Both the position numbers and the translations under genes were made by a program. 64,000 nt of DNA from Setoptus koraiensis (Eukaryota > Animalia > Arthropoda), in assembly GCA_048013815.1 (NCBI GenBank), contig CM106585.1, positions 15,562,001 to 15,626,000 of the forward strand, written 5' to 3'. The notes under the pieces are model-generated. The model had not been told where the DNA came from and made no database searches. It saw nothing but the letters and a program-made list of their open reading frames with translations. How positions within the stretch are numbered: the first letter of the stretch is position 1; each line of letters starts with the position of its first letter. Below are positions 35,314 through 62,126 of this stretch, piece after piece.

Positions 35314-36164
35314 GAGACAGTCTTTCTTAACTTGGTGAGCCATAAACAGCCCACCAAATATACTGTGCGAATGGACTCCTTTTCTAGTGAGTTTATGTTT
35401 ATTTGGCATTCATTTTATTCCATAGTTAACCCTTAATACTTACATAATTTGTTGTTAATTTAAACTAGACCACACAAGCTAGCACAGGGCTACGGAGCTC
35501 GACAATCCCCGTCGCCTGAGCCAGCGATACGAAAAAAGCACGATTTATCCTTGGATATGTGTGCTGCCGATTGTGCGCAAACGACACGATACGGCAAGGC
35601 GTATAGCGATAAAGCCAAGTTGAGTTTGTGATATACTTAACTTGCACTATTAAACGGTGAAGCCGCAAAATCATTACCAAAAATATCAACGAAACAATGT
35701 CAAAAGAGAAGCGCCAACATATTGCGACGCACTCCACATTTGTTGTTGTTTTTCTTCACTGTTCAATCATCTCATTACGTATTCTAATTAGCCTGCTCGA
35801 TCGTTATTTTGAAGATTCCCTCGAGAGCATCGTCATCTGAGTTAAGTTGAGTTGAGTCGAGTGAACTGTTTGAGCAGCAAGAGACAGGGAAGCAACAATT
35901 GAGCAAGTCACCGAAACTTTCATTTGTGCACTCTTTTTTTATGCCACCAGCAACCATTCAACCAATCAGGCGATCTAAGAAAACAACGAAACGACGAAAA
36001 GAAAATTTTAGTTCAAAGTGACCAATCACCTGTGTTAGTAACACTCTGAGGTCAGTTGGTCGTCTTTTCGATCGGCAAGTTTATCAAAAGTGGCGACGTC
36101 TGGTCGCATAGATGTCAGCGCTGTAGCGGTCGATAACTGTGATTCGGATAACGATTCAGAGCGG

Positions 36165-39100
36165 ATGGATGAAATTCAGCAGCGAAGCCGGTGCGATCAG
36201 GATGGCCAAGACAAGCTTTTGAATCATGTTTATCCGTGCTCCTCATCATCGAAGCGTTCACACGCTAAGAACAATAGCGATAAATTTGTGAATGGTGGCG
36301 ATAGAAGTGACATAAGAATAGAGGCAGATGAACAAACAAAATCTTCGTCGGTGTGCCGAGCTGATGTGACTGGAAATGATATCATTGCTAACTTGACTAA
36401 CGAGCAATCAACTCAGCATTGTGCTAAACACAATCACACGACTCACAGCGGCACCATCAAGTCAACTAAATCAAGCGGCAACAATGGAACCGGTAGCAAC
36501 AGAAGAAAGAATCACCATATTTATTCAACGAAATTATCACAAACTCGCCAGCCATTTAGTAAATCTATATTCACCGGCTTGGCCTGGAGAATGAATCGTG
36601 GCCGCAAAAGGAACTATAAGTCAATATTGTCTTCAACGAAGGACTCCATGCAAAAAGAATTAAACAGTGATGGTGATTTGGAAAAGAGTGGCTTGTCATT
36701 TTATCGTGCCCAGGATAGAATGTACCAACACGAGAGTTGCAACAAAACAGACCAACAGAATGATAAAACAAAAAGACAACAACATATCGGACAATGTTTG
36801 TGTGGTTCGGGGCGGCATGAGCATGATTGCGATTCCGTTGGTTGTAACAATAACAACAGCAAATCAACAGCAGCAAACAGCAACAAAATGAGTAAAAAGA
36901 AGCTGCTCAAGAGGAAATTGAAAGTTGCACAACATGAACGAGAGTCCACAATTAGTGAGAAAAACAGCATTCCATCGAGCAAGACTTCAATAGTTAAGAC
37001 ATTTCTAACAAAGAATATAGACTCTTACCAGCCAAGTGCCAAGCAAAGTTTGTCACAACGAATTGTCCATGGTAAACAAACAAAAAGTTTGCATGATCAA
37101 TTGGCCATATTTCAGTTGTCTAATCAATCGTCGGCCTCCTCATTGTCGTCGTCGTCGTCCGACGGCGTCACTAACAACGCAATCAGTTGCTCTGACGTGT
37201 CTTGCAGCTCCATCGAGATAGTCTGGCAAGAAAATGTTGTCAAGCAGCAGAAGTTAGCCACACCGTGTTCTCAATTGGCGACAGGTGCGGATATAGTGTC
37301 GCCAATGAGACAGTGCTGTGGACAGAAGCACGACGACGACAACGAGACAAGTGGAGTGGCCAACGGCAAGCAGCTTGGCCTATATAAAGTGATCACAAAG
37401 AAGCCTCAAGCGATGAAAGTGAACGACCCGCTTTCCTCGGTTCTTTCTCAACCGAACGAGGCCTCGTCGGCGCGGGCAAACGGCTTCAATTATCCCTGTT
37501 CGTCTCGGCGGTCGGTTTTGGAACGGGCGAAGGCGTTCGATAAGCCCATTTCAGTGGGCCATTCTAGGCCGTCGAGGCAGCATCGAGCAAACGACAGTGA
37601 AAAAGTCGTGATTGATACATTAACGTTAACGAAAGAAGACGAATCGTTATTATCAGCGGCAGTGCAAGAGAAAAAACATACAATTGGCAACAGTGACAAC
37701 ATTGGTTTGGCGGACAGCCGCGAGGGCTGGAATAATAATCCTTTGTGGTCTTCCGGAAGTCAGAGCATGGAATGTGATAAGGGCGCCAAAAATGTGCACA
37801 ATGACAAAAACAATGTGTCAGTAGCAACATCCGTAGAGGTTACACAACAGAAGCATCAAGAATTGTTGTTATCGTCAACAAACAATGTGAAACAACAGCA
37901 ATCCTCAGATGCTGGCCCATCTCAAGGGTGCAGCATTGATACTGCTGCAGCGCCGTTGCAATCTCAGCAGGACCACAAGCGATCGCAGGCCGTGATATCT
38001 GCAGATGACGATGATTCTACCAGCATTAGCAGCATTACCAGTTGTGATGGCATCAGCAGCGACGTCGGTAGCAATGAAAATGAAAGTGTTAAAAACAGTA
38101 ACAGCAATAATAATATTAATCAAGATAACAACGACGATACCTCAGATAAAATACTTCATTTAGACCCATTGTCTGGCAATATACAAATTATAAAAAGAGA
38201 CAACAGCAACAATTTTTTCCTAGATAAATCAATAAATTTCGTAAATTCGCTGAGATCGTCCATAAGCTCCAAGCTGAAATCCACCATTGCCAGTGGCAGC
38301 AATCGTAGTAGTAGTGGTGGCGGTGGTGCGGATCAAGCGAATAATAAGAATAGAATTGAAGAACCTCCAAGATGTTCCAGCAAGAACGATAGCACGGCAT
38401 CCAACAGCAACAGGAATAGTATAAATTTCGATAGTGACTCAACAAAATGGACCCTCACCAATGTGGCAAGAACGAGACATTCTGTAGACGGTGGCAGTAG
38501 TGTGATAGTGGCAAGAAGGAAGCACCAAATAGACAATTCGTTGTCGGACAACAGCAATGATCCGTTCTCGTTAATTCACAGCCATTTGATTGGTAGCAGT
38601 GGCAAGACAACTGGCGACAATTCCAATTCCAAGGCAATTTCGAGGGCACCCTTGGAGGTCACCCAAGCTGACGATGATGCACTGACGCACGAGATTATTG
38701 GCCAAGCCATGACAGAGCACGCTGGCGAAACAAATCATGACATTAGCTTAGGAAAAGTGAAGAGCAGCTCAACCGAACCGGCAGCAGCAGCAACTCATTT
38801 GAATGTGTGTAACGATAGCAGAGATCATCATTTCACCATAACAAATCTCGACGACGACGACGACGACGCCGACAACGCGACCAGCCGGCAAGCCATCTCA
38901 TCCAGCAACAAGCTGGCCACCAGTCCACAAGGTCAACAGGTTTGCTCGCTCATTGACAAAATTAATCAAGGAATCGCTAGCGGAAAGTATATTCCTTCGG
39001 CGTCGTTTAATTCCAAACGATTGAGCACGCCGACAAGTAGCAGCGAAGCAAGACTAAAGTCGTCGCTTGCCGACGATGGACGACCACCAAAACAAATTGC

Positions 39101-42100
39101 ATGCCAACAACCATATAAACCGGCCGACCATCTTGATGCCACCAAGCCACGTGATAATGATGGTAATGTTCTCAATTGGGACCCGATAGAGTCATCAATT
39201 AGATCGCTTGATAATTTGTCGTCGTCAGAGGGCGGCCTCACAAGCAGCAACAAGTGCAATCATAGCTGGCCACAAAAAGATAACAGAAGAACTACTAGTG
39301 GCTCAGAGATAATAAATGACAGCAAGAATCGATCGCAAGATATTGGCCAAAAAATAAAAGCCATAGATATTGCGTCGTCTGGTTACAAGTCGTCGTCGTG
39401 CAAGACTAGTGATAATGGTGCTAGTGGCAAGTCAAAACTGCTCACCAGCATAGATAACAGCGTAATTATCAGGCCAACAGAAAATGTCAACGGTAGGTAC
39501 AATTCAAATATTGAATTGAATGCATGGAAAAATAGTTCAATTAACAGACAGCTAAACAATGCCAACAGCAGCAGAGATGATAATACTAAACAAAGAGAGG
39601 ATTGCAATTTATCTTGTTCTTCTAATTTATCTAATAATATAGCAACCAATGCTGCTGTTGTTGTTATTTCACCAAAGTCTACAGTCACTAGCTGTCGTAA
39701 CAAGAGCAAACTTGAGCGACATAATCGTTGTCGCCAAGATGATTGTTTACCCTCTTCATCGCCACCACTGGTGGCTAGCAATAGGGCATTAGGCAATCAA
39801 GTGCTTGATCACCACCACTACAATGGCATCGCCACAAAACACAGTAAACCACTAGCTTATAATAATAATAATGATAATATTAATAAGAATGGTTGTAACG
39901 ATAATAATAGTGATTTAGATGTTGGGCATACGATTGTGGCAAACAGTGGCGCTTCTATAGCGCTGATAACATCATCTGCTACCAGCGGCGACAGTAGCAG
40001 TACCGATATTGGTGGTTGCATAGCGCCAGAATTAGACAGATACAATTTATTTGCATCATCATCAAAACATAAGCCAGGCAACAACAACAACAACAACAAC
40101 AATAGCTCAATTATCTGTGCCAATAGTATTAGTAAAGCGTCTGATTCAATTAGTAGGCTATCTACTGATACATCTGCTCAACAAGAAGACAAACAGCTAT
40201 TGAGCATAAGTGATAGCTGTAAACTTATCAGCGGCGGGCGGACACCTGAACGTTGTTCCATCAACAACAATCGCCGATCGTTTCCCATGTCCATGAAAAG
40301 AATAGTCACATATAACAGCGACATAAACACGGCCAGCCGGCATAATGACAAACAAGTGACACTTGACGAGAGTTACGCAACAATCACAGAAGCTGCAACG
40401 AAAGCCAGCAGTCTATTTGGTCAATCGACGACGCAACACAGTTGCTCACTAAACTATCCACTCAACTATCCACGCGCGAATAGTAACATTAGCTTGCCAG
40501 CTTGTCGCGAAAAATCAGTGAACGGGTTTCATAGCGGCAATTTGCAACAAACGAGATCATCATCATCAACAACAGCTGCTGCTGCTGCCACTGCCGAAAG
40601 GGCTGCATCCGTCGGCGGCTCAAATGTTGGCGGCTCAAAGAATTTGTCAAAAATAAAGCGTCGCACCGAGAGATACTGGTTTCGAAAATTGGCATTGCAT
40701 CGTCAGTCAAAAGACCCGCAAAACGAGTCGTTGCCATTTGAGCTTGTTCGAGCCAAAGTGAAAACCAATCGCTCGCTAAACGGAGTCACCTCGTCGGAGG
40801 ACGACGCATCGGGCCCAGATAATTTGGGAGTAGGTCATCCAGTGGCAAGTGGCAGCCAACAGCGCTTCGCATCAACTGAGGGCAACAATCAAATCGGGCA
40901 GCCCTTATATCAGCCAACTCACAATAGTGATCAGCGCTACTCATCGCTGGCATGCACGTCGTCGTCGACGACGACGTTTAAAAATAGCCCAGCGGCAGCA
41001 TCATCATTATTATTATTCGCAGACAGCAAGCGTTATCCCAGTGGCTCACTTGAGCCATTAACAGTTAGACAGACGCCGACAACAACAGAGGATCAAATAT
41101 CATCGCTATCGGTGTCGCTAGTGCGCAAAAATGGCACATGGAAAACATCGAATTTATACACGAATCCCCTTTCTACTCAAAACAAACAAATCAACCACAG
41201 CAGCCAGCATAATGGCTTGATTATTTCGCCATCAATTGTAAGCCATAACACCACTACCACTAATAATAATAGTAATAATCAATTTATACCACCGCTGCCG
41301 GCACCGCAACAAGTGTCCGTCGCCGAGAAGCCGCTGGATAGTGGCGGCCGCCATACTAGCAACCGGATTAACAGTGATAAATATAATCGGCTGCTGTTGA
41401 GCCGTTTTGGCGACACCAGTGCAAACAACAACAACACCACTGGCAGAGTCAATCAGGCGAACAATTTTGAGACAACAACAACGCCAACAACTAATGAGCT
41501 AAAACTGAGCGACACGATGAAGAATGTTCGAGAGAAGAATGCTCATTCGGAACACACGCTAATGAATGGCAAGGCTAGCTATCAGAGCAATTGCAACAGT
41601 TGTAGTGCAACAATTAATCATAATGTTCAGCAACAACAAAAGCAATCTATCAAACATTCACATCTATCAAACGATTCAGTCAGCCGGCCCACTGTAGCCA
41701 CGACTAAAACAACAATGTCAACGACAACCAACAACAGCTGCGACACTTCCAATAATAATAATCATAATAATACTGGCAACTATTCTGCAACAGTAACAAC
41801 TCCGACACATTTACACAAACTATTGGATAACTCAACAGAACGGTCCGACGGCAATAGTAAGCTAGCTAATGTAGCCATGGGTGGTGAAAGTGGTGCCAGA
41901 AAATTGGAACAGCAGCGACAATCGGGCGCCCAGTTGAAATTGACCTCGAATAATGACGACAATAGAGAAGGGCTGTTGTTGCAACACGACACTTTCCAAC
42001 TGAATAATACTAATACTAGCAACTGTGAAAGCAAAAGAAACAATGATTGCATTTTGGATACATCTTCTAATTGTTCGCTAACTACTAATAAAAACAACCA

Positions 42101-45100
42101 CCGCACTGCCAGCGACACAAACCAGCCAGAACAAGTCAACAAGCAAACTGCCAGCCCGAATGCAAATGCGTCCGCTAATAATAGCAATAATAATAACAGC
42201 AATAATAACAGCAATAATCGGCCTGATGGTACAACAGTGCACATAGTCGACTATGTCACTTATCGACAACCGCATTACAGAACGCCAATATTGCCTGTTG
42301 GAATTATCAAGGATATTTATCTGAAACGAGCCCAGCGTTCGTCGTTGCCTGGCGTCGCCTATCCATACAACAATGATAAATTGAAGCCGTGTATCTCGAT
42401 CGATTGCTCATCATGCTCCACATCATCGTCGTCATCGCTTTCCATCATGCCATCACCATGTAAACAAACTGCTTCAACTTCCTATTGTTACTACTCTAAA
42501 CAAACTCAACCAATTGCCATCACAGATCCGGAGCGCACCGAAACTGCACGACAATTTACCACGTCTAGCCTCACTAGCAGATCGTCTGCGGCCACAAATA
42601 GTGTCATGATTGGCGAGGGCGTTGTCCGGCGTGACACTGCAACGTCGCCAGAGACAAGCTTGGGCCAAAAGAACAGTCTAGGCGGCGGCGGCAGCAAGAC
42701 CAAGCCAGTGAGACACAGAAAATCGGTTATGGATCTAGTGCGCAACATCGAAGGTCAAATATCGTCGACCATCAGCGGCAACGGTTGCTCCAGTTTGCAG
42801 AGTAACAAAGCAAACAATGGCAGAGCAAGCAACATGTCGTTGTTTGCTCGCGACGACAACACTACCACCAACAGTAATCATCCGCAACAGCAAACATCAT
42901 CGACAAAAAATTTATTGCCCCTAACAGTTGATAGTGGCAACAGTGATCGACGACGCTACTCAACAACGAGTAGTGTCGATTCGAAAAGAAGCCTAGACAA
43001 GCTGAGAAAAGTGTACCATGTGTCAACAAAAGGTGCCTTGGTGCTTCCTGTGAAACAGAAAGAACAACAAGAGTCACGTAATAGCATGGACACACGACAA
43101 CAGCAGCAACAGGGTCATAAACAACAGGCGTCGATGTCCTCATTCGAGCAGCCAACAACTGGCGCGGACGATAGTGATTACGAGTATCAAGAGGACAATT
43201 TCAATTTAGATGACGACGACGCAGTCGACGATGCAAACAACGCAGGGCCTTTCTATTTGCATGAACCAACACCAAAATCCAATTTGCTCACATCAGATAG
43301 GACTAATAATTACTATTCAGAAAACAAAACAACAACTAATAATGCTCAACCAACAACAACGACACAACAACAGTGTGTGCAAAGATCTCGTTCTAGTCCA
43401 GCGACAATAGTGGCAAATAATAGCAACAATTATATTAATACTAATAATAGTACAGCAGCTTCACAACAACAAAAATTGTCCATAGTCAGGCATACAGATC
43501 ATTCAATTTCGCAAAGATTTTCAAATAATCCAAAACTGAGCTCTTGTTACAAGATGCGCAGGTCGCCTAGAGACGAACAAATAGAAGAGGCCATATGCGA
43601 TCTGGAGTCTGTGTGTCATTGCATTCAAGAAGATGAGGACCTGTTCGAGCGGGCAGAGCGAAGAGATTTGCCAACTAAATTTCAAGAGATGAGATTCTCC
43701 GAAAACAACAACACTACCAATCGGCTTAAACGATCCACCAATCCCATCATTAAAAATAACAACAATGAAAATAGATACTCTGCGCCATCACTTTCGAGAA
43801 ACGACTTTGAACAAGCACCAGCTAACGGTGTTGCAGATAAGCCACAAACAAAGAACAACGGTAGCAGCAACAACAGATTTAGTGAAGATGTCAATAATAA
43901 CAACATGATCAAAGATGATGTATCGCTTGTGTCGAGAAGTCACAGCGATAACGCGTTTAGTTATTTTGGCCGTCGCGATCATGTCGACACTATAGAGACG
44001 GACGCGATTGAACGTAATCATTCGTTACATCGTTACAGGGGCGCATCAAGCTCCTCAACCTTGCTGGGTACCGGTCTGACTCGAAGGACCCCACCTCTGA
44101 GAAGATCGGCAATACCTGATAAATTTCTAGATGATTATGCCTACAGGAGACTATCACCAGTGCAACAGCGAACCAACTATTCGCCCACTAGCCCCATTAT
44201 AAACAACAACATGAGCTATCTGTTGTGTTCGGTCGCCCACTCGGCCCCGTCTGTTGATGTTGAGCCAATATTTGATAGCAACCATCTGGTAGAATTAGAT
44301 AGAATTGGTAAAGATGATTCCATCTCGAGCAGATTAGGTCTGGAGCGGTCAGATAGCGCCGGTCAAGATGTCGCAGTGATCAATGATTTGGCCTATAGGA
44401 AGATGAGTCAGTCCGAGTCCAGCAGACCGTCTAACGCACCGCCGGATATGAGTTTGCCGGTGGTCACCAGTCAGCAATCAAAGAAGAATGTCTCTCTCGT
44501 GGTGCCCAACGCCAACTCCAAACATCAGTGCCAGGTCGAAGGTAAAGACAGACCCAATCCATTCAGAGTAAAACTTGTCGACGACAATAGGTCGCACGAA
44601 CATACTAATGATGATAATGATAGCGCTATAATTGAATTGGGTTTGCTAAGTGAGGATGATCGAGCATGGAAGAATCTGAAAAAAGATTGTGATAAGAAGA
44701 AGGGCGTTGCACGTCGGTCTCCAAGATGCTGTCAAGCGTTGTCGCCCCATTCAGTTTCCTCCTCAAGAAAATATCCCTACTCCTATGAAACGCCTAGTGA
44801 TCAGAGCCTTGTGAATTCGAATCCATCTAGCGGACGCGAATCTGCGGCCGCTCAACAATCACCCACTTACCTGTATCACCATCACGGGCACGATGAGCGA
44901 TCAAATTCTTCTAACACTTTCAATGATCACCAGCGCCTAATAGACAGCAGTTGTAGCAACAGTAGCAGTATTCACAGGAATAATATCACCACCACCTATA
45001 ATTCATCGCCGTCAATTGATGCAACAACTGCGACACCTTCACCAGAAACTATGTATCGACACGAATCATCCTCTCCACTCATCAAAAGGGAACAACGAGA

Positions 45101-45887
45101 CCAGTCCACTAATAGTCAAACGGAGCGTTGTTTATCGTCGGCCTGCTCTAACCGAACGACATTCTCACAAACCAGCTGCCCAAGTGCCGAACGTCTAAAG
45201 ACTAGCATATTAGATACACCCAAGAAGACACGACCAAAGATTACAATTGGGAGACCAGGCTCAAGAAATTCGTTATTAGACGCCAAATCTGTCAAATCCT
45301 CACATAGCGGTCAAGATTCTCCGAGTCCTGTTGGGAACAAGCAACAAATTAAGCAAGCCAGTGATTCGATTTTCAGCGAAGAGAAAAGAAATGATACTAT
45401 CGAGGAGTTGAAACCATCTAGGATAACTCCAGTTATTTTGGACTCAAAATCGACAGATGACGACGACGATGAGGAATACAGAGAGCTACTGGCCGATTCG
45501 ATCAGACCAGATGATAGAGTAATCGTTCGCTCTAATGACTGCCGGAGAAGTACCAAACCAATCTCAATCATCTACAAGTCGCTGACGGACCTACATAATG
45601 CAAATAATGATTGTGGAGGGAAGCAGTCTGCGGATGATTGCACAATGAAACAACAAGCTCAACGAGACGACAAATATGGAAACTGTGACAAAGAGACTGA
45701 CTTTCAGGTGCATCTCGTTGACCATAAACAAATGTTGAGGAACAACGACGACAGTCTGATAAATGGGACTCAGTTGGACAAAACTAGAAAACAATTGCCA
45801 ACAATAGGTAAAAAAGAGAAGCCTTTTTTCTCCATCAACGAGTATTCATCTGTTTCGCGACCGAAAACCCCATTATATACAGTTTAG
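36165..45887 (+). CDS. Giant uninterrupted ORF (~3,240 aa from the first ATG); S/N/T/D/Q-rich, predicted largely disordered, function unknown
   Basis: 9.7 kb without an in-frame stop while other frames are repeatedly closed; no folded domain recognised. Confidence 0.8.
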   Translation: MDEIQQRSRCDQDGQDKLLNHVYPCSSSSKRSHAKNNSDKFVNGGDRSDIRIEADEQTKSSSVCRADVTGNDIIANLTNEQSTQHCAKHNHTTHSGTIKSTKSSGNNGTGSNRRKNHHIYSTKLSQTRQPFSKSIFTGLAWRMNRGRKRNYKSILSSTKDSMQKELNSDGDLEKSGLSFYRAQDRMYQHESCNKTDQQNDKTKRQQHIGQCLCGSGRHEHDCDSVGCNNNNSKSTAANSNKMSKKKLLKRKLKVAQHERESTISEKNSIPSSKTSIVKTFLTKNIDSYQPSAKQSLSQRIVHGKQTKSLHDQLAIFQLSNQSSASSLSSSSSDGVTNNAISCSDVSCSSIEIVWQENVVKQQKLATPCSQLATGADIVSPMRQCCGQKHDDDNETSGVANGKQLGLYKVITKKPQAMKVNDPLSSVLSQPNEASSARANGFNYPCSSRRSVLERAKAFDKPISVGHSRPSRQHRANDSEKVVIDTLTLTKEDESLLSAAVQEKKHTIGNSDNIGLADSREGWNNNPLWSSGSQSMECDKGAKNVHNDKNNVSVATSVEVTQQKHQELLLSSTNNVKQQQSSDAGPSQGCSIDTAAAPLQSQQDHKRSQAVISADDDDSTSISSITSCDGISSDVGSNENESVKNSNSNNNINQDNNDDTSDKILHLDPLSGNIQIIKRDNSNNFFLDKSINFVNSLRSSISSKLKSTIASGSNRSSSGGGGADQANNKNRIEEPPRCSSKNDSTASNSNRNSINFDSDSTKWTLTNVARTRHSVDGGSSVIVARRKHQIDNSLSDNSNDPFSLIHSHLIGSSGKTTGDNSNSKAISRAPLEVTQADDDALTHEIIGQAMTEHAGETNHDISLGKVKSSSTEPAAAATHLNVCNDSRDHHFTITNLDDDDDDADNATSRQAISSSNKLATSPQGQQVCSLIDKINQGIASGKYIPSASFNSKRLSTPTSSSEARLKSSLADDGRPPKQIACQQPYKPADHLDATKPRDNDGNVLNWDPIESSIRSLDNLSSSEGGLTSSNKCNHSWPQKDNRRTTSGSEIINDSKNRSQDIGQKIKAIDIASSGYKSSSCKTSDNGASGKSKLLTSIDNSVIIRPTENVNGRYNSNIELNAWKNSSINRQLNNANSSRDDNTKQREDCNLSCSSNLSNNIATNAAVVVISPKSTVTSCRNKSKLERHNRCRQDDCLPSSSPPLVASNRALGNQVLDHHHYNGIATKHSKPLAYNNNNDNINKNGCNDNNSDLDVGHTIVANSGASIALITSSATSGDSSSTDIGGCIAPELDRYNLFASSSKHKPGNNNNNNNNSSIICANSISKASDSISRLSTDTSAQQEDKQLLSISDSCKLISGGRTPERCSINNNRRSFPMSMKRIVTYNSDINTASRHNDKQVTLDESYATITEAATKASSLFGQSTTQHSCSLNYPLNYPRANSNISLPACREKSVNGFHSGNLQQTRSSSSTTAAAAATAERAASVGGSNVGGSKNLSKIKRRTERYWFRKLALHRQSKDPQNESLPFELVRAKVKTNRSLNGVTSSEDDASGPDNLGVGHPVASGSQQRFASTEGNNQIGQPLYQPTHNSDQRYSSLACTSSSTTTFKNSPAAASSLLLFADSKRYPSGSLEPLTVRQTPTTTEDQISSLSVSLVRKNGTWKTSNLYTNPLSTQNKQINHSSQHNGLIISPSIVSHNTTTTNNNSNNQFIPPLPAPQQVSVAEKPLDSGGRHTSNRINSDKYNRLLLSRFGDTSANNNNTTGRVNQANNFETTTTPTTNELKLSDTMKNVREKNAHSEHTLMNGKASYQSNCNSCSATINHNVQQQQKQSIKHSHLSNDSVSRPTVATTKTTMSTTTNNSCDTSNNNNHNNTGNYSATVTTPTHLHKLLDNSTERSDGNSKLANVAMGGESGARKLEQQRQSGAQLKLTSNNDDNREGLLLQHDTFQLNNTNTSNCESKRNNDCILDTSSNCSLTTNKNNHRTASDTNQPEQVNKQTASPNANASANNSNNNNSNNNSNNRPDGTTVHIVDYVTYRQPHYRTPILPVGIIKDIYLKRAQRSSLPGVAYPYNNDKLKPCISIDCSSCSTSSSSSLSIMPSPCKQTASTSYCYYSKQTQPIAITDPERTETARQFTTSSLTSRSSAATNSVMIGEGVVRRDTATSPETSLGQKNSLGGGGSKTKPVRHRKSVMDLVRNIEGQISSTISGNGCSSLQSNKANNGRASNMSLFARDDNTTTNSNHPQQQTSSTKNLLPLTVDSGNSDRRRYSTTSSVDSKRSLDKLRKVYHVSTKGALVLPVKQKEQQESRNSMDTRQQQQQGHKQQASMSSFEQPTTGADDSDYEYQEDNFNLDDDDAVDDANNAGPFYLHEPTPKSNLLTSDRTNNYYSENKTTTNNAQPTTTTQQQCVQRSRSSPATIVANNSNNYINTNNSTAASQQQKLSIVRHTDHSISQRFSNNPKLSSCYKMRRSPRDEQIEEAICDLESVCHCIQEDEDLFERAERRDLPTKFQEMRFSENNNTTNRLKRSTNPIIKNNNNENRYSAPSLSRNDFEQAPANGVADKPQTKNNGSSNNRFSEDVNNNNMIKDDVSLVSRSHSDNAFSYFGRRDHVDTIETDAIERNHSLHRYRGASSSSTLLGTGLTRRTPPLRRSAIPDKFLDDYAYRRLSPVQQRTNYSPTSPIINNNMSYLLCSVAHSAPSVDVEPIFDSNHLVELDRIGKDDSISSRLGLERSDSAGQDVAVINDLAYRKMSQSESSRPSNAPPDMSLPVVTSQQSKKNVSLVVPNANSKHQCQVEGKDRPNPFRVKLVDDNRSHEHTNDDNDSAIIELGLLSEDDRAWKNLKKDCDKKKGVARRSPRCCQALSPHSVSSSRKYPYSYETPSDQSLVNSNPSSGRESAAAQQSPTYLYHHHGHDERSNSSNTFNDHQRLIDSSCSNSSSIHRNNITTTYNSSPSIDATTATPSPETMYRHESSSPLIKREQRDQSTNSQTERCLSSACSNRTTFSQTSCPSAERLKTSILDTPKKTRPKITIGRPGSRNSLLDAKSVKSSHSGQDSPSPVGNKQQIKQASDSIFSEEKRNDTIEELKPSRITPVILDSKSTDDDDDEEYRELLADSIRPDDRVIVRSNDCRRSTKPISIIYKSLTDLHNANNDCGGKQSADDCTMKQQAQRDDKYGNCDKETDFQVHLVDHKQMLRNNDDSLINGTQLDKTRKQLPTIGKKEKPFFSINEYSSVSRPKTPLYTV

Positions 45888-54253: not shown

Positions 54254-57200
54254 TCAATGTTCTTCTTTTGAATCTTGAGATGTAACTGCTTCCTGTTTCT
54301 GCAGGGCCTGCTGCTTCCATCGCCTCCAACTATTTTGTATAAGTCTGGCGCAATAGTGTTGCCGTTGAAGTAAATAGGTTGTTGTCAACTTCTCAAATTG
54401 AGCCTGCAATTCATAATATATTATTTTGAGAAACTGTTAAATTGAGGATTCTCCCGAAAAGAAGTCTTAATTTAAAAGATTTCCTCTTACCTTGTGGAGA
54501 GTTGTTTGAACCTGTTGAAGTTGTTCATTCCCTTGGATGATAAGACCTTTCCTGGTGAAGAAATGCTTGGTCAGAGCGTCTAGTATATCCACGCAGTAGC
54601 AGATGTCATCCTTGTAAACAGGTATATCTAATAGTACGAGTGCTAAAGTGTTGGGCTTCGGAATCCTAAGTGGATCTTCTAGCGCATCAACAAAATCGGC
54701 TAGTTTCACATAAGGCAAAAATTGTGTACCTTTCGGATCAAATTTTTGCCAAATCTCATAGTACATATCGTAGTCATCATCTGTGAGGCCTTCTTGAACC
54801 TCCTCCGTTGCTTGGCTATAGTTCTCCAGAATCACAGCGATATACATGTTGATTATGATTAGAAATGTCACTATCACGTACGATACTAGATAGGCAATAG
54901 CGATCCCTTTATTACCACAAGTCCCCTCAATGTTGTTCACTGGATCTGCTTGCTCACAGTTATTTTCGTCATCCATGAGCGGATCGAGAACGAGATCCCA
55001 ACCCGCAGAGGTAGACATCTGAAATAGCAATGTGAGAGAGCTGAAGAAGGTACCAAAATTAAACGTTTCATCGATGCCCGCCCTAGGCCTGACATTCATG
55101 AAGAAAGACATACCAAATATGGCGTAAATAAACATGACCAGGAATAAAAGAAGGCAAATGTTAAATAGAGCTGGTAATGACATGGCCAATGCAAATAATA
55201 GTGTCCGGATTCCTTTTGCTCCCTTAACCAATCTAAGAACTCGTCCCACTTTTACGACTCTAACTACACGCAGTAATGTTGGTGAAACTAGATACTTGGC
55301 GATATATTCTTTCATAACAACTCCTAGAATCGATAGAATCACCACACAAGAATCGAAAATATTCCATGGCTCACGGAAGTAGAAATGGCGCATAGCGAAT
55401 ATTTTGAGCAAGCTCTCTATAGTGAATATAGCAATAAAAATCAAATTGAGGCGCTCCAGGACCATCGTGAAATAAGCCGATTGTCCATAATGTTCTAAGG
55501 CCATAACAAACATATTCAATCCAATGAATACCATTATCACCATATCGAATTTTTTATCTGTTGTCACGTCGAAGACCCAAGCCTGGAATCTAAATTTTGG
55601 TCTCGTCATGGCTCTGACAGGTTTCTTTGATCGCATTTTTTTCATTGCATTATAATACTTTTTTTGATCTTCTGTCATGAATATTTCAAGTGATCCACCT
55701 GTTTTCTTCTTTTGTTCGTTGAAATTGTCAATGATCACACCAATAAAGAGGTTGAGTGTGAAAAATGAACCAAATATCACGAAGAACACAAAGTAAAAGT
55801 ACATGTAGATGTTAGCTTCGCGACTTGGTTGTTCATCTCTCAATCGAGAGTCCGTTGCACTGTTCATGATGTCGATCCATCCTTTAAAAGTTGCCTGTAA
55901 AGATTACGACGAGTATATCAGTAAGTTAGTTTGCTGATCAGACAACTATGAATGATAATAATTACAGAGGAATTTATCTAATAATTATAAAGTCGTCGAG
56001 TTCTATTGTCATTTGGATAATTGTATCATTTGATTATAAGAATATCTTACCACTTGAAACAGAGCTAGATAAGCATTTAGAACATTGTCGAAATTGATCT
56101 GTGGATTTGACCATGTGTGGTTTTTCATCAGGCACTCTTGACGTGTTGGAACTTCGCTATAGTCTAACACCTCTTGATTGTTATCCACACAACGATGAAA
56201 TTTCCCTCCGAACATTTGGACACCCATTATGGCAAATATTAGCCAGAATATCAGACAAACTAGCAGCACATTGAATATAGCTGGTATCGCTTGTATGAGG
56301 GCATTCACTACGACTCGCATACCCTGAAATCTTGATAGAGCCCTCAGCGGCCTCAGTCCTCTCATGGCTCTCAATGTTCGCATGGTCTTGAGTGCTTGAA
56401 TTTTTCCACTGCCTAATAATGATGCCATCAGATTGACAAATGATACAAGCACTATCACAAAATCTAGCCAACTCCAAATATTCTCAAAATATCTCCGGAA
56501 ACCAAAAGCACACCATTTCATAAGCATTTCTAACGAAAATACTAGAGTGAATATATTGTCCAACATATCGAGTATTATTTTTAGAGTTGGTCTGGTCTTG
56601 AGATGCTTGTCTTCAAGAGCCAGTGTACACGAGCTCACTACGATCAATATTAAGATCAAAGTATCAAAGTATCTGTGCTCAACTATTTTGCGCATGAAAC
56701 GCCTAAATAGAAACCACCTCAAACAGAGGCTACCAAAGCAGATACTTTTCCTCATCAGCATGTCGATATATTCTAAATCGCGCTCATCCTCTTCTTCCAT
56801 GTCTTCTTTGTCTGGACCTTGTAGATAATAAGTAGTTTTGGACGGTGCTCTCTCATGCACTGATTCTTCGTCTTCTTTTGTTTGTGGACTATCTATTGGA
56901 GGACATTGAATCGTTATAGTTACATCTGTTGTTCCAGCATCCGTCTTCTGGTTCTGTTGGTTATCATTGTTATCGATAATAGATGTTTTTCCGTTACTAT
57001 CTATCGAAGAATTGTCAAGAGAATCTTCTTTAATAGGCTGCATGGCTTCATTCATGTATGCACTGGTTGCACTTGCACATGACATTGGTGGCAGATCGCC
57101 TGCGAGACGCACGCACGACCCCATCTTGGTATCAGCGTTGTTCAATTTGTTACAAGATCTCAGAGATGTTAAAGCTATACTTTGCCGCCTATTTTTTGTT

Positions 57201-60200
57201 GTAGAGCTATTATCACATTGAGCATTCGTTGGGATTTTTGGTACATCCTCGCTCTTATCGATAGTTGTGTCGTAACAATTTATATTGACACAGTTACCGT
57301 TATTATCTTCTTCAGGTGGTGAAATGGATATCGTTGTCTCAACATAATTTTTGGTGTAAATGCCTTTCTTTAAAAGATTTGTATGCCGCTCTATTCTTTT
57401 TAACCGATCTTGCTTTGATAATCTTACTATCCGCATAGACTTGCATTTTTTATCCTTCATATCCTCACCAGTGGACATTTTTTTTCGGCACAGAATAAAC
57501 CTGACGACTAATGAAACATACTTTCTGATAAATCTTCCTGCTTTCTTGAACCTCTCAATGGCCTCCTGTAGCTTTTTCGTGTCAACACTTTCAGCTTGAG
57601 GCGAAGATAGATTTGATGCCCCGAAAGATGCGAGCAAGAGTGCCAGGAATAAGTTTAAAACGACTAAATTTCCTACTGTCACAGCAACAAGGAAGAATGG
57701 TATACATGGCCAACCATCAACCAGGAGACAGTCCCACATTGGCTCAATCCATTCGGCGCATAATATCCTGAAGACTATCATGAAAGAGTGCATAAAATCG
57801 GTAAAGTTCCAACGGGGAACTTGATGATCTGGGAAGCGGTCTGAGTATAGCTCATAGTTTTTGCCAAATAGCTGCATTCCCATGACAGCAAAAATGAACA
57901 CTATAATTGCTAGGACAAATGTCAGGTTACCCAGATCACCCACTGCTTTTCCCATGATAGAAATAAGTAAATTGAGAGTGGGCCATGATTTCGCCAGTTT
58001 GAATACTCGCAGCTTTTGGATTAAATTTAAGTATGGTAGTAGATATATAGATCAGTCTTTAATAGAAAGATAGTGTCCATGCTAATACATGTGATGGGAT
58101 AATTGAACAGTATAACTTACCAATCGAAATGAACGCAGCACTGATAATCCGTAGACACCTTCAAGTCCTAGTTCGAGCAAGGATAGTCCCACAATGATTG
58201 TATCAAAGACATTCCACCCTTCGCGAAAATAAAACTTTGGGCTTAAAGCCATGATTTTCATAGATGCTTCAACCGCAAACGTAGCTGTAAAAAAATAGTT
58301 CCCCCGCTCTAAAATTGTTTTCAAGTCTGGATCAATTTCGTCATAATCCATAGCCATGAATAGAGTATTGATGACAATGCACAAAGTGATGAATAGTTCC
58401 ATGAATGGGTCGAATACTATCAAAGATATGATTTTTTGCATTCTTAACCACAATGGGCAACATTGCCAGATACAGAACATATCTAAAAAATCAAGACAAA
58501 ATCCCACACATTGATCTCGCCAGCTAAAACTTATCTGGTCCATATCGTCATTGAAGTTGATGGCATCGTATTGCATATTAGGATCTGGGCATCTATATCG
58601 ATTGAGAGCCGATATTAACTCCATGGCATGCCTCGAACCTGCCGAAGATCGTGATGGTCGCGAACTCTGATTGTGGAATGATTGTGCCGGTGAAGCATAA
58701 CCACTTGCATGCTGAACATGATGCACAATAAATATAGGATATCAGTATAAGATTGAGTACTAAATTTAAAGCTCGGTTCTCGAATGAAGTAAATATTTAC
58801 ACTCACGTTATAACTCCTATTTGACAAAGAGCCGCTACTTCGTCGGTTGTTATAAGGGTTTGTAGTTGACCACAAACGTATTACGCGTCTCAAATCAATA
58901 TTACCGCTCACCGATAATCTTGACCAATTACTTGATCTTCTGGTGTAGCGACGTTGCCAGTTCGAGTAACCTAGGGCGTCTAAATCTGGTCTATTCTCGG
59001 GAGGACAGAATTCAGTTGTTGTCTGTGATGGACGATTTTGGTGGCTATTGTTCATTTTGAACAAACTTATCGCTGTATTGCTAGCATTAGATGAATGACG
59101 GTATGGGTACCGCGTTTGAAAATTCTCTATAGATACTCTGTTTGCGGCATTTGATCGAACTCCTAATGAGGTTGAGTCTAGAAGTGAGAGTTCGGATTTC
59201 TTTTGTCCGCTAAGATTTTGTTTGGTATAGTCCCCCCGACATGATGAAACACTAAGCCTCGCATTATTATGATGGTGTGATGATTTTGACGGTGTACAAT
59301 CATGCGAATTCGCTCTCAATTTGTTGGCGTTCTGTTGTTTCAGCAAGTCATCTTCACTAGCTCTGTAGGTATAACATATAGGCTGGAGTGATTGGTGATG
59401 CGATGGTTGTCTAGGTGCTAGTCGATTAGATTGATCTATTGATAGTAAAACGTGAGCATGTTTTGGACTTAAATGATTATTATCTTTATCAGCTGAAAGC
59501 GTAGCTTGTACCGGCTTCTTCGGAGAGCTCGGCAGACTAAAACTGTTCTGCTTTTTACAGTTGAAATGCATTTCAGACGGAGAGACATGACAGAAAAGTA
59601 TAAGAAGGTTATTTTGTATGAGAAAATAGCTATAAACAGTTGATTAGGCACGTTGCCGAATTAAGTTGCTTTCTACGGAATATTGGTGCATCTATGTTGA
59701 AAGTGCTTGTTTGCTTGGCTAATCTATTAAACTACATAATCTAGAAACCTACATCAGTTGTGCATTCTATATCATCACTTACGATCCGAATTTGTGCAGC
59801 TCTTTGCTGCAAACTAAGAGTTGCGATGTTTTTTGTATTCTGGGCCATCTCGGTGCTATTAGTGGATACACTTCGATGGTATTTCATCTCTGGCTTGATT
59901 GAGCCGCTGGCAGATGAATCACTACGCTCAGTTATAGGTAAAATATTGGACTTGACAGAGTGCTCACTAATTACTGGTGATGCTCGCTGGCTTTTTACTC
60001 TCAGATCATTCATCGAAGATAGATAAGGTTGCAGAGAGTCTCGATGATGGTAGGCGGTCTGAGACAACCTTTTCACTTGTTGTTGGCTAAGCATTCCCTT
60101 TGGACATAACCCACCGATCAACGCTTGACCTACAATACCTAACTCCATAGATGGCCGGTACATTGATCTACCTCGCTGGCTACCGCACTCTGATCTTCGT

Positions 60201-62126
60201 TCTTGTTCTAGACGACAGCTTTGCAGAAATTGAGCTTCATCAGCGGCAGCAGCTTCCTCTTCTTCTTCTGCTCTTCTTTGTAGCTCATTATAAGACATTG
60301 CTACAATGGCTAAGATTAAATTCATAAGATAAATGGAACCTAGAAATATACTTATAATAAAAAAGATGATATGCCATGATCCGGCACATCTTAACACTTG
60401 TTGATATAGACCTTCCCAGAAATCTTGAGTCATTAGGCGAAAGGAAGATATAAGAGCCCAACCAAATGTGTCAAAACTTGTGAATCCATAATCCGGGTTT
60501 GGCCCGAAACCTTGAATGCACGTGTGACCGTCAGGACATAACTGCGCCCCGCTGGAATTACCGCACAACCAGGGCTGATAGATGGAATAAAAGGAAGTGG
60601 AAACTAGTAAATCAGTCAGTTTTTTTTTTCAGAGTTGCTTCCGCTATCAAAGATTATACTTATTGATTAATTACAATATGATCTTCGTCGTAATGCCAAT
60701 TGTTTGAATTGCTGCACCACTCGAACCATTGTTCGTCAGTCATGGTAGTGGGACCATCTTTGATACATTTTTGCGTAAGTTGACCCATGTATATTTGTAG
60801 TCCCAACAACGAGAACACAGACAGGGAAAATAATGTGAGAACTACAACATCTTTTAAATTTTTCACTGAATCGATCACAGCTCCAACGATAGTTTTCATG
60901 CCTGTACAAGAAAACAGAGTAGTATAGATTTCATTTTTTGAATTAATGTGTCAATCTTATTTTAAACAAGTTAATGAAAGAACAAAATTAAGTTTATGTC
61001 ACTTACCAGGTACTATAGCGACTGTTTTGAGCGCTCTGAGAACCCTAAACGTCCTTATAACGCTCAAGTTGCCTAAATCCTCTATTCCCAGCGTAAGATA
61101 TGCCATTATTATGACCAGAAAATCTAGCCAGTTCCTATAATTATTATTATTGATGCGGATTGTTATTATTAATGCGGATTGTTATCATTGATGGTTCAGC
61201 GCCAAAATGAATTATCGTAATATGATTTTGATTATATAGGTAGGACTAGGTTGATTTGCTATTGTCACTCACCATGGATCTCTCAAATAAGTGAACTCCT
61301 CCAGAATGAATCCTCTTGCCAAAACTTTTAGGCACATTTCTATAGTGTATATTATCGTAAAAATAATTCTGATGGCGAGCAGTGAACATTGATTAGCAGA
61401 TTTATATTTTTAGTTGGCGCTTTCCTATATTGAACAGACTTGAGCGAAGCTACACTCGACAGGCACACTTACTCGGTTTTTTCTACTAGATCATTGCTTT
61501 GAAGGGTCATTAAGACACAATTGATGAGTATTGTCACTATGACAAATAGGCTAAATATTGGATTAACTAGAATGTACATGGCCACTCTCCTGAACGGATT
61601 AAAAGGGTCCAAACAGAAAAGGGCCTGAGTGGCGCTAAATCTAAAAATATCTCTTCCTTTGCTGACAATCACAAAAGTCTTTTCGGTTAATTTTGTTTGT
61701 TTTTGTTGATATTGCAATGATTTTCGTTGGTCCATATTGCGTATTGATTTTATCATGTTGTCGAATGTGTGCAGATGTAAATATTATTGATTGCTTGATG
61801 CGACCGAGGCAGTGATGTTTATAGGATGGATGGAGAATAGAATATGGTAAATAACTCACCTCTTTGTTTGAGTAAAATTGATCAATGTCCTCGATGGGCT
61901 TGCCAATCAACTCTGGCGGTATACGCCTCTGAAAGGCGGGCGGCAGTTGCAATCCGGAAGCCAAATATGGGTCTGGCTTTTGTTTAGCTCTACTTTCCTG
62001 ATAGGATAGAGATGTTCTCTTGTTTGATTTTGATTCTTTTCTGTTGACAATATTCTGCAATGATTCTCTTGTGAACGGTTTGAATATTTGACAATGGGCG
62101 AGACCGATGGCAGCACTTGATGACAT
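54254..62126 (-). CDS. para: Voltage-gated sodium channel alpha subunit (para/Nav1), about 11 exons
   Basis: Four domains with a DEKA filter (TQDFWE, CAEWIE, TFKGWID, TSAGWD), IFMT inactivation gate, DIII-IV linker [12 protein letters not shown] and IQ motif ([10 protein letters not shown]). Exon borders read at GT-AG sites; two internal borders (near 60.6 kb) are approximate. Confidence 0.95.

What the first reader, a model, noticed from the sequence alone, without database searches (positions are those of the whole stretch)
56330..56385. Extra gating-charge unit in the domain III S4 voltage sensor of the sodium channel
The DNA reads [20 protein letters not shown], versus the conserved arthropod [17 protein letters not shown]. 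This is a clean 9-nt in-frame insertion (about 56357-56365, M-R-G or an equivalent register) that keeps the every-third-residue spacing and adds one Arg. DI, DII and DIV S4 in the same gene have normal length. S4 length in Nav1 channels is, to my knowledge, essentially invariant, so activation or inactivation coupling and toxin/pyrethroid response may differ.
Basis: partly seen in the sequence, partly recalled or inferred. Interest (0 to 1): 0.75.

Follow-up and report, generated by a model that had tools for sequence, protein, structure and literature searches.

The report
Longer voltage sensor in mite sodium channel
The only nerve sodium-channel gene of this tiny plant mite has three extra amino acids, one of them a charged arginine, in a voltage-sensing helix whose length is the same in every other animal sodium channel I checked; related gall and rust mites share the change and it looks undescribed.

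Summary
On the minus strand, 56330-56389 encodes the domain III S4 of a Nav1/para sodium channel. It has six regularly spaced basic residues before the Ser-Arg, where other Nav1 channels have five. The extra 9 nt (M-R-G register) lie at 56357-56365.

- **Not an artefact.** The same extended S4 occurs in 23 distinct sequences from at least 11 independent assemblies, runs or metagenomes. Across nine genomes the amino acids are invariant while synonymous sites are saturated.
- **Single origin.** The carriers form one clade (100/100 support). It includes the named eriophyoid mite Fragariocoptes setiger.
- **Absent elsewhere.** It is missing from Sarcoptes, Dermatophagoides, Oppia, Tetranychus, Panonychus, Leptotrombidium, Dinothrombium, Varroa, ticks, scorpions, spiders, horseshoe crabs, crustaceans, insects and vertebrates. 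All 199 Nav1-type entries outside the clade have the standard length.
- **No back-up gene.** This genome has no second Nav1 gene.
- **Not in the literature searched.** I found no paper describing it.

A six- or seven-charge DIII S4 is normal in the sister family Nav2/60E, so the architecture is workable. The functional effect, most likely an added outer gating charge that retunes the domain III sensor, is inferred and was not tested. I rate it a new variant of a known kind, of moderate interest.

The parts
56357..56365 (-). The 9 extra nucleotides (codons ATG AGA GGA = M120-R121-G122, in the numbering of window:56051-56722:-). The register is ambiguous within the periodic S4.
   Evidence: gap opposite these residues
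56330..56389 (-). DIII S4 charge ladder: K112, R115, R118, R121, R124, R127, then S130 and R131.
   Evidence: invariant in nine genomes
56051..56722 (-). DIII S1 to S5 and the start of the pore turret. This is the 3' part of one large exon that ends at FQV|GTAAGA.
   Evidence: AF2 helices
56567..56569 (-). D52 in S2, one helical turn outside the conserved outer acid D55. It is fixed in the clade (22/22) and rare elsewhere (1/19). It is a candidate partner for the added charge.
56462..56539 (-). Conserved charge-transfer-centre residues F62 and E65 (S2) and D87 (S3), unchanged in the clade.
56051..57955 (-). Large exon (ORF 56009-57955) holding DII S5-S6, the DII-DIII linker and DIII S1-S5 without interruption. 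There is no room for the mutually exclusive IIIS3-S4 exons seen in other arthropods.
55877..55894 (-). DIII pore motif ATFKGW, which supplies the Lys of the DEKA selectivity filter.
55664..55684 (-). Fast-inactivation gate IFMTEDQ in the DIII-DIV linker.
54254..62126 (-). Approximate extent of the whole Nav1/para gene (N-terminus near 62126, C-terminal exon ending near 54254-54269).

Best explanation
This is the single Nav1 (para-type) voltage-gated sodium channel gene of a small-genome mite, probably an eriophyoid. In the common ancestor of its clade, the S4 helix of the domain III voltage sensor gained three residues including one arginine. The charge ladder went from K-R-R-R-R to K-R-R-R-R-R, with the every-third-residue spacing kept. 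The inner end (RPLRAL-S-R, leading into the S4-S5 linker) and the S3-S4 loop are unchanged. The net effect is therefore one more charged helical turn at the outer end of S4. The change has since been held by strong purifying selection. Inferred, not shown: the extra turn acts as an additional outermost gating charge. It is probably partnered by the clade-specific acid D52 on S2 and helped by loss of the neighbouring basic residue. This would alter the voltage range, charge movement or kinetics of the domain III sensor. In Nav1 channels that sensor contributes to opening and to entry into and recovery from fast inactivation.
For: - **Identity as Nav1.** There are four Ion_trans domains and a DEKA filter: TQDFWE, CAEWIE, TFKGW, TSAGWD. 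An IFMT gate is present. The best PDB matches are Nav1.5, Nav1.8 and Nav1.7 at about E 1e-104.
- **Insertion real and shared.** 23 distinct sequences carry it. They come from at least 11 independent sources.
- **Single clade.** Support is 100/100, with Fragariocoptes setiger basal.
- **Purifying selection.** In nine genomes 28 of 29 S4-region residues are invariant, while all 25 degenerate invariant codons vary synonymously.
- **Absent elsewhere.** All other Acari and other animals examined lack it. Counts are 199 of 199 standard against 3 of 3 extended among entries with a Lys pore.
- **Only one Nav1-type DIII in the genome**.
- **Co-occurring fixed changes.** D52 is present in 22/22 clade rows against 1/19 others, and K/R/Q56 becomes T/N.
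- **Structure prediction.** AF2 predicts S4 as one continuous helix, residues 110-130, running through the insert.
- **Workable elsewhere.** Six to seven charges in DIII S4 work in Nav2/60E and in protist four-domain channels.
Against: - No functional data exist, so the effect on gating is pure inference.
- AF2 confidence is lowest exactly at S4 (pLDDT 58-68), and I had no coordinates to see which Arg sits at the charge-transfer centre.
- An acidic residue at the D52 position also occurs in one channel without the insert (1 of 19 rows), so that pairing is only suggestive.
- The whole channel sits on a long branch with several other changes at otherwise invariant sites. The insert may be one of many relaxed or compensated changes.
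- Only one clade member has a taxon name, so 'Eriophyoidea-wide' is probable but not shown.
- Nematalycidae, Tarsonemidae and Demodex were not sampled.
Confidence: 0.8

Rival explanations
1. The insertion is real and conserved but functionally near-neutral. It only lengthens the extracellular end of S4 and the S3-S4 region by one turn that stays outside the electric field. It is conserved because any later indel or substitution in S4 would be harmful, not because it changed gating.
For: - The inner half of S4 and the S4-S5 linker are unchanged.
- The clade lies on a long branch with many other substitutions at conserved sites, which suggests a period of relaxed or shifted constraint.
- S4 is highly conserved in all Nav1 channels regardless.
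Against: - The added turn carries an Arg in perfect register.
- It is accompanied by clade-fixed charge changes on the facing outer S2 (D52 gained, basic residue 56 lost).
- No other Nav1 in the sample tolerated any length change here.
Confidence: 0.3
2. It is an assembly or annotation artefact, or a polymorphism private to this genome.
For: None beyond the prior that short indels can be assembly errors.
Against: The same amino-acid insert, with different synonymous codons, occurs in nine genomes and at least 11 independent datasets, including an NCBI assembly of another species. The 9 nt lie in the middle of an uninterrupted exon.
Confidence: 0.01
3. The gene is not the Nav1 orthologue. It is either a divergent paralogue or a Nav2/60E-type channel, in which long DIII S4 ladders are normal.
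For: Nav2/60E proteins have 4-5 basic triads upstream of RPLR. In the midpoint-rooted tree the clade sits outside all other Nav1 sequences on a long branch.
Against: - The DIII pore has Lys (DEKA), not the Glu of Nav2, and an IFMT gate is present.
- The DIII part is 60-67% identical to the arthropod Nav1 (para) rows, against 34-35% to the other four-domain channels of the same genome.
- The sequences flanking S4 follow the para pattern (IQAL-K...[18 protein letters not shown]), not the Nav2 pattern (SRWQGMRIVV).
- No other Nav1-type locus exists in the genome.
Confidence: 0.03

Closest known systems
Arthropod para / Nav1 channels (e.g. Varroa destructor VGSC, Tetranychus urticae para-like, Ixodes para, Drosophila para)
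   Same: Four-domain architecture, DEKA filter, hydrophobic inactivation gate, and standard-length S4 in DI, DII and DIV. Almost all of DIII outside the insert matches (60-67% identity over the DIII part compared, 224 residues).
   Different: - DIII S4 is three residues longer, with a sixth ladder charge.
- D52 is gained and basic residue 56 is lost on S2.
- The DII filter context is CAEWIEP instead of CGEWIES.
- The gate is IFMT instead of MFMT.
- There are no mutually exclusive IIIS3-S4 exons.
Fragariocoptes setiger protein annotated 'Sodium channel protein type 10 subunit alpha, partial' (GCA_019968535.1, P0158)
   Same: Identical extended DIII S4 and the same clade-specific substitutions. 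It is 62% identical to the window's gene in the main tblastn match, which covers about 1,400 of its residues.
   Different: It is a different and fairly distant species. Its public annotation gives no hint of the S4 peculiarity, and the name (a vertebrate Nav1.8 label) is automatic.
Nav2 / NaCP60E (DSC1/BSC1) channels
   Same: DIII S4 carries six to seven regularly spaced basic residues ending in RPLR-x-x-S-R, so a longer ladder in this domain is functional in a sister family.
   Different: In Nav2 the extra charges sit at the outer end where Nav1 has a neutral residue. The pore is DEEA and there is no Nav1-type inactivation gate. The window's gene has Lys in DIII and an IFMT gate.
DIV S4 of the same channel
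   Same: HMMER aligns the extended DIII S4 to Nav1.5 DIV S4 without any gap (domain 4), so the insert brings DIII to the DIV-like ladder length.
   Different: DIV has its own role (inactivation coupling) and its own flanking sequence. There is no evidence of gene conversion from DIV.

Membership tests
Nav1 (para-type) voltage-gated sodium channel | Four homologous six-helix domains in one polypeptide | tested here: met
   Ion_trans hits on four exon ORFs. tblastn of P0158 and P0273 maps DI to DIV at 62126-54269.
Nav1 (para-type) voltage-gated sodium channel | DEKA selectivity filter, with Lys in the DIII pore loop | tested here: met
   TQDFWE, CAEWIE, ATFKGW and TSAGWD located.
Nav1 (para-type) voltage-gated sodium channel | Hydrophobic fast-inactivation motif (IFM/MFM) in the DIII-DIV linker | tested here: met
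   IFMTEDQ at 55664-55684.
Nav1 (para-type) voltage-gated sodium channel | Closest relatives are Nav1/para proteins rather than Cav or Nav2 | tested here: met
   Best PDB hits are Nav1.x. Named hits are para channels. Other four-domain loci of the same genome are only 34-35% identical.
Nav1 (para-type) voltage-gated sodium channel | Canonical DIII S4 ladder K-x2-R-x2-R-x2-R-P-L-R (five charges before S-R). This is an empirical invariant, not a formal criterion. | tested here: not met
   There are six charges. 199 of 199 other Nav1-type entries have five. This departure is the finding itself.
Nav1 (para-type) voltage-gated sodium channel | Sodium-selective, fast-inactivating current | not testable with these tools
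   Needs electrophysiology.
Nav2 / NaCP60E | Glu instead of Lys in the DIII pore (DEEA) | tested here: not met
   The DIII pore reads TFKGW.

The most novel reading that the evidence does not exclude
The extra charged turn is an adaptive retuning of the domain III voltage sensor that arose once at the base of the four-legged (eriophyoid) mites, which are among the smallest animals and have sub-micrometre neurons. It changes the gating charge or the set-point of the sensor that links opening to fast inactivation. These channels would then be a natural experiment on how S4 length sets Nav1 gating, and possibly on sensitivity to acaricides or toxins that act through domain III.
Probability: 0.25. 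Interest if true: 0.65.

Novelty: new variant of a known kind. Interest (0 to 1): 0.5.

Why it matters
- **Biophysics.** The DIII S4 motif is one of the most invariant stretches of animal sodium channels. A naturally fixed, selected length change with an added arginine is a ready-made probe of how many charges the domain III sensor needs, and of how its travel couples to opening and inactivation.
- **Taxonomy.** The 9-nt insert is a clean molecular marker for a mite clade whose placement is debated.
- **Crop protection.** Eriophyoid mites are major pests and virus vectors. Their only Nav1 target differs from the insect and spider-mite channels at several otherwise invariant sites. Resistance numbering and homology models built on house fly or cockroach channels will be off by three residues after this point.

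Tried and rejected
- **Origin as a 9-nt tandem duplication.** In the window GGACTGAGG is followed by CCGCTGAGG (6/9 match). Synonymous sites are saturated among relatives and the resemblance is not shared, so this can be neither supported nor excluded.
- **Second para paralogue or a Nav2 gene in the same genome.** Only Cav3-like and two HVA-Cav-like loci were found.
- **Naming the unnamed clade members through their run or metagenome accessions.** Only JGI 3300030504 could be traced, to an agave and cactus epiphyte study. The others gave nothing.
- **Identity with the published two-chromosome eriophyoid genome from Rhodamnia (34.5 Mb, PMC11879100).** Rejected on size: this assembly is 48.76 Mb in two contigs. 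TTTGG arrays are present.
- **Literature on eriophyoid or other Nav1 S4 insertions.** Nothing was found.
- **AF2 and Foldseek.** They confirm a Nav-like sensor with a continuous S4 helix, but confidence is low at S4 and no coordinates were available to place individual arginines.
- **Joined model.** I did not build a spliced full-length protein model. All searches used single exons by reference, so no full-length search or fold was run.

Full report
**What is at the coordinates.** The stretch lies inside one long exon (ORF 56009-57955). That exon encodes DII S5-S6, the DII-DIII linker and DIII S1-S5, and it ends at FQV|GTAAGA at 56051.

**Which gene it is.** Pfam finds Ion_trans domains on four exon ORFs. 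tblastn of two mite sodium channels maps DI to DIV between about 62126 and 54269. The selectivity filter is DEKA: TQDFWE, CAEWIE, ATFKGW, TSAGWD. The DIII-DIV linker carries IFMTEDQ. The best solved-structure relatives are Nav1.5, Nav1.8 and Nav1.7 at about E 1e-104. It is therefore a Nav1/para channel and not a Nav2 or a Cav.

**Is the insertion real?**
- In each of the four alignments printed, the solved chain has a three-residue gap opposite 'mrg'.
- In a 36-row alignment, R115, T116, R118 and R124-A128 are invariant, and the only columns private to the window's group are M120, R121 and G122.
- The S3-S4 loop has the same length as in other arthropods. The domain is therefore three residues longer overall, all of it in S4.
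- DI ([14 protein letters not shown]...), DII and DIV S4 are standard length.

**Is it unique to this genome?** No. A search of 1.84 billion representatives and a word search seeded with one of its hits returned 22 further distinct proteins with the identical extended ladder.
- One is named: the Fragariocoptes setiger (Eriophyoidea) protein from GCA_019968535.1.
- The rest are unnamed ORFs from Logan, JGI and ENA assemblies.
- Their sources are independent: ERZ761561, JGI 3300030504, ERZ27241721, SRR4142433, SRR33593474, SRR31346743, SRR31346762, JGI 3300061473, SRR10674650 and SRR30758801.
- JGI 3300030504 belongs to a study of the epiphytic microbiome of agaves and cacti (PMC6978686). That fits plant-surface mites.

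**Codon evidence.** I compared the S4 region in nine different genomes. Of 29 residues, 28 are invariant; the exception is S or Q just before the final Arg. Every one of the 25 degenerate invariant codons shows synonymous variation, with up to six Leu and five Arg codons. This excludes an assembly artefact and shows strong purifying selection on the extended helix.

**Where it is absent.** The standard [14 protein letters not shown] is present in:
- Sarcoptes scabiei, Dermatophagoides pteronyssinus and Oppia nitens;
- Leptotrombidium deliense, Dinothrombium tinctorium, Tetranychus urticae and Panonychus citri;
- Varroa destructor and seven tick species;
- scorpions, spiders and horseshoe crabs;
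- Daphnia, copepods, springtails and about 75 insect entries;
- vertebrates.

I counted basic triads upstream of RPLR in every protein fetched. All 199 entries with a Lys pore outside the clade have three. The only entries with four are clade members.

**Phylogeny.** A maximum-likelihood tree of the DIII region (42 rows) puts all 23 carriers in one clade with 100/100 support. Fragariocoptes is basal. Next comes the window together with P0001, which is 98% identical in DIII. Then comes a 20-row group that has Q instead of S before the last Arg. One origin is the simplest reading.

**The organism.** The assembly is 48.76 Mb in two contigs, and earlier notes of this scan call it a mite. Taken with the tree, an eriophyoid is likely. 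It is not the 34.5-Mb Rhodamnia-associated mite of PMC11879100.

**No standard copy in reserve.** Searching the whole assembly with the DIII exon gives one 100% match, which is the window itself. The other matches are only 34-35% identical. They read as a Cav3-like channel and two high-voltage Cav-like channels. The extended S4 therefore sits in the animal's only Nav1. No Nav2-like locus appeared, but that search gives lower bounds only.

**Context in other arthropods.** Several public gene models contain two tandem copies of the IIIS3-S4 segment: D. pteronyssinus, Sarcoptes, Leptotrombidium, Dinothrombium, an Acari fusion entry and one Drosophila entry. These correspond to the mutually exclusive exons known for insect sodium channels (PMC3805903 abstract). 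Both copies have the standard length. In the window the region is part of one uninterrupted exon, so this alternative splicing is not available.

**What else changed.** Clade-fixed differences in the DIII sensor include:
- D52 on S2, one turn outside the conserved outer acid D55 (22/22 in the clade against 1/19 elsewhere);
- loss of the basic residue next to D55 (K/R/Q to T/N);
- C84S and F111L.

The charge-transfer-centre residues F62, E65 and D87 are unchanged. Elsewhere in the protein the clade has CAEWIEP where 123 of 123 standard arthropod entries have CGEWIES, and IFMT where they have MFMT. The channel as a whole is on a long branch.

**How it probably works.** This part is inference. 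The inner end of S4 and the S4-S5 linker are unchanged, and so is the S3-S4 loop. The helix is therefore extended by one charged turn at its outer end, in effect adding an outermost charge. AlphaFold2 predicts a single continuous helix from residue 110 to 130, running through the insert, but with its lowest confidence there (pLDDT 58-68; mean 77). Foldseek matches the model to Nav1.x structures. The gain of an acid and the loss of a base on the outer S2 fit a new salt-bridge partner for the added charge.

From established knowledge of Nav1 gating, the domain III sensor contributes to opening and is immobilised by fast inactivation. On that basis I expect a change in gating charge, voltage range or return kinetics of this sensor. 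A longer ladder is clearly workable. Nav2/60E channels of insects, shark, lamprey, paddlefish and coelacanth have four or five basic triads upstream of RPLR, as do protist four-domain channels. HMMER also aligns the extended DIII S4 to DIV S4 without a gap.

**Literature.** Searches for eriophyoid sodium channels, for mite domain III voltage sensors and for S4 insertions found no description of this feature. The Aculops lycopersici genome paper mentions only ENaC-type sodium channels. This covers the open-access library only.

**Verdict.** The correction is that the feature belongs to a whole mite clade rather than to this genome alone. It is a new variant of a known kind of protein. The evolutionary claim is strong and the functional claim is untested.

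Noticed in passing
window 57743-57760 (minus strand); also P0001, P0003-P0006, P0156-P0170: The DII pore loop reads [10 protein letters not shown] in 18 of 18 clade members that cover it. All 123 standard arthropod Nav1 entries that cover it read RVLCGEWIES. Gly becomes Ala directly before the selectivity-filter Glu, and Ser becomes Pro four residues after it.
   Followed up: partly
window 55664-55684 (minus strand): The fast-inactivation gate is IFMT, as in vertebrates. It is MFMT in 134 of 135 standard arthropod entries that cover the site. Both other clade members that cover the site also have IFMT.
   Followed up: partly
P0176, P0272, P0274, P0194, P0278, P0184 (public gene models): Several annotated sodium-channel models of mites and one Drosophila species contain both mutually exclusive IIIS3-S4 exons in tandem, which duplicates S4 in the predicted protein. 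This is an annotation error in public records.
   Followed up: partly
window 56051-57955 (minus strand): In this mite DII S5 to DIII S5 is one uninterrupted exon. The alternative IIIS3-S4 exons found in other arthropods have been lost along with the introns.
   Followed up: partly
G000 whole genome (C2:3.87 Mb, C1:3.55 Mb, C1:14.66 Mb): The DIII query found one Cav3-like and two high-voltage Cav-like loci but no Nav2/60E-like locus. Nav2 may have been lost in this streamlined genome. The search gives lower bounds only.
   Followed up: no
G000:C2:1407964-1408218, C2:10519037-10519076, C2:24499030-24499184: There are long TTTGG arrays, the repeat reported as the telomere of another eriophyoid genome. 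Some lie well inside contig 2 rather than at an end.
   Followed up: no
window 36090-45887 (+ strand): There is a 3,265-codon open reading frame, rich in Ser, Asn and Gln low-complexity sequence, upstream of the channel gene. I did not examine it.
   Followed up: no
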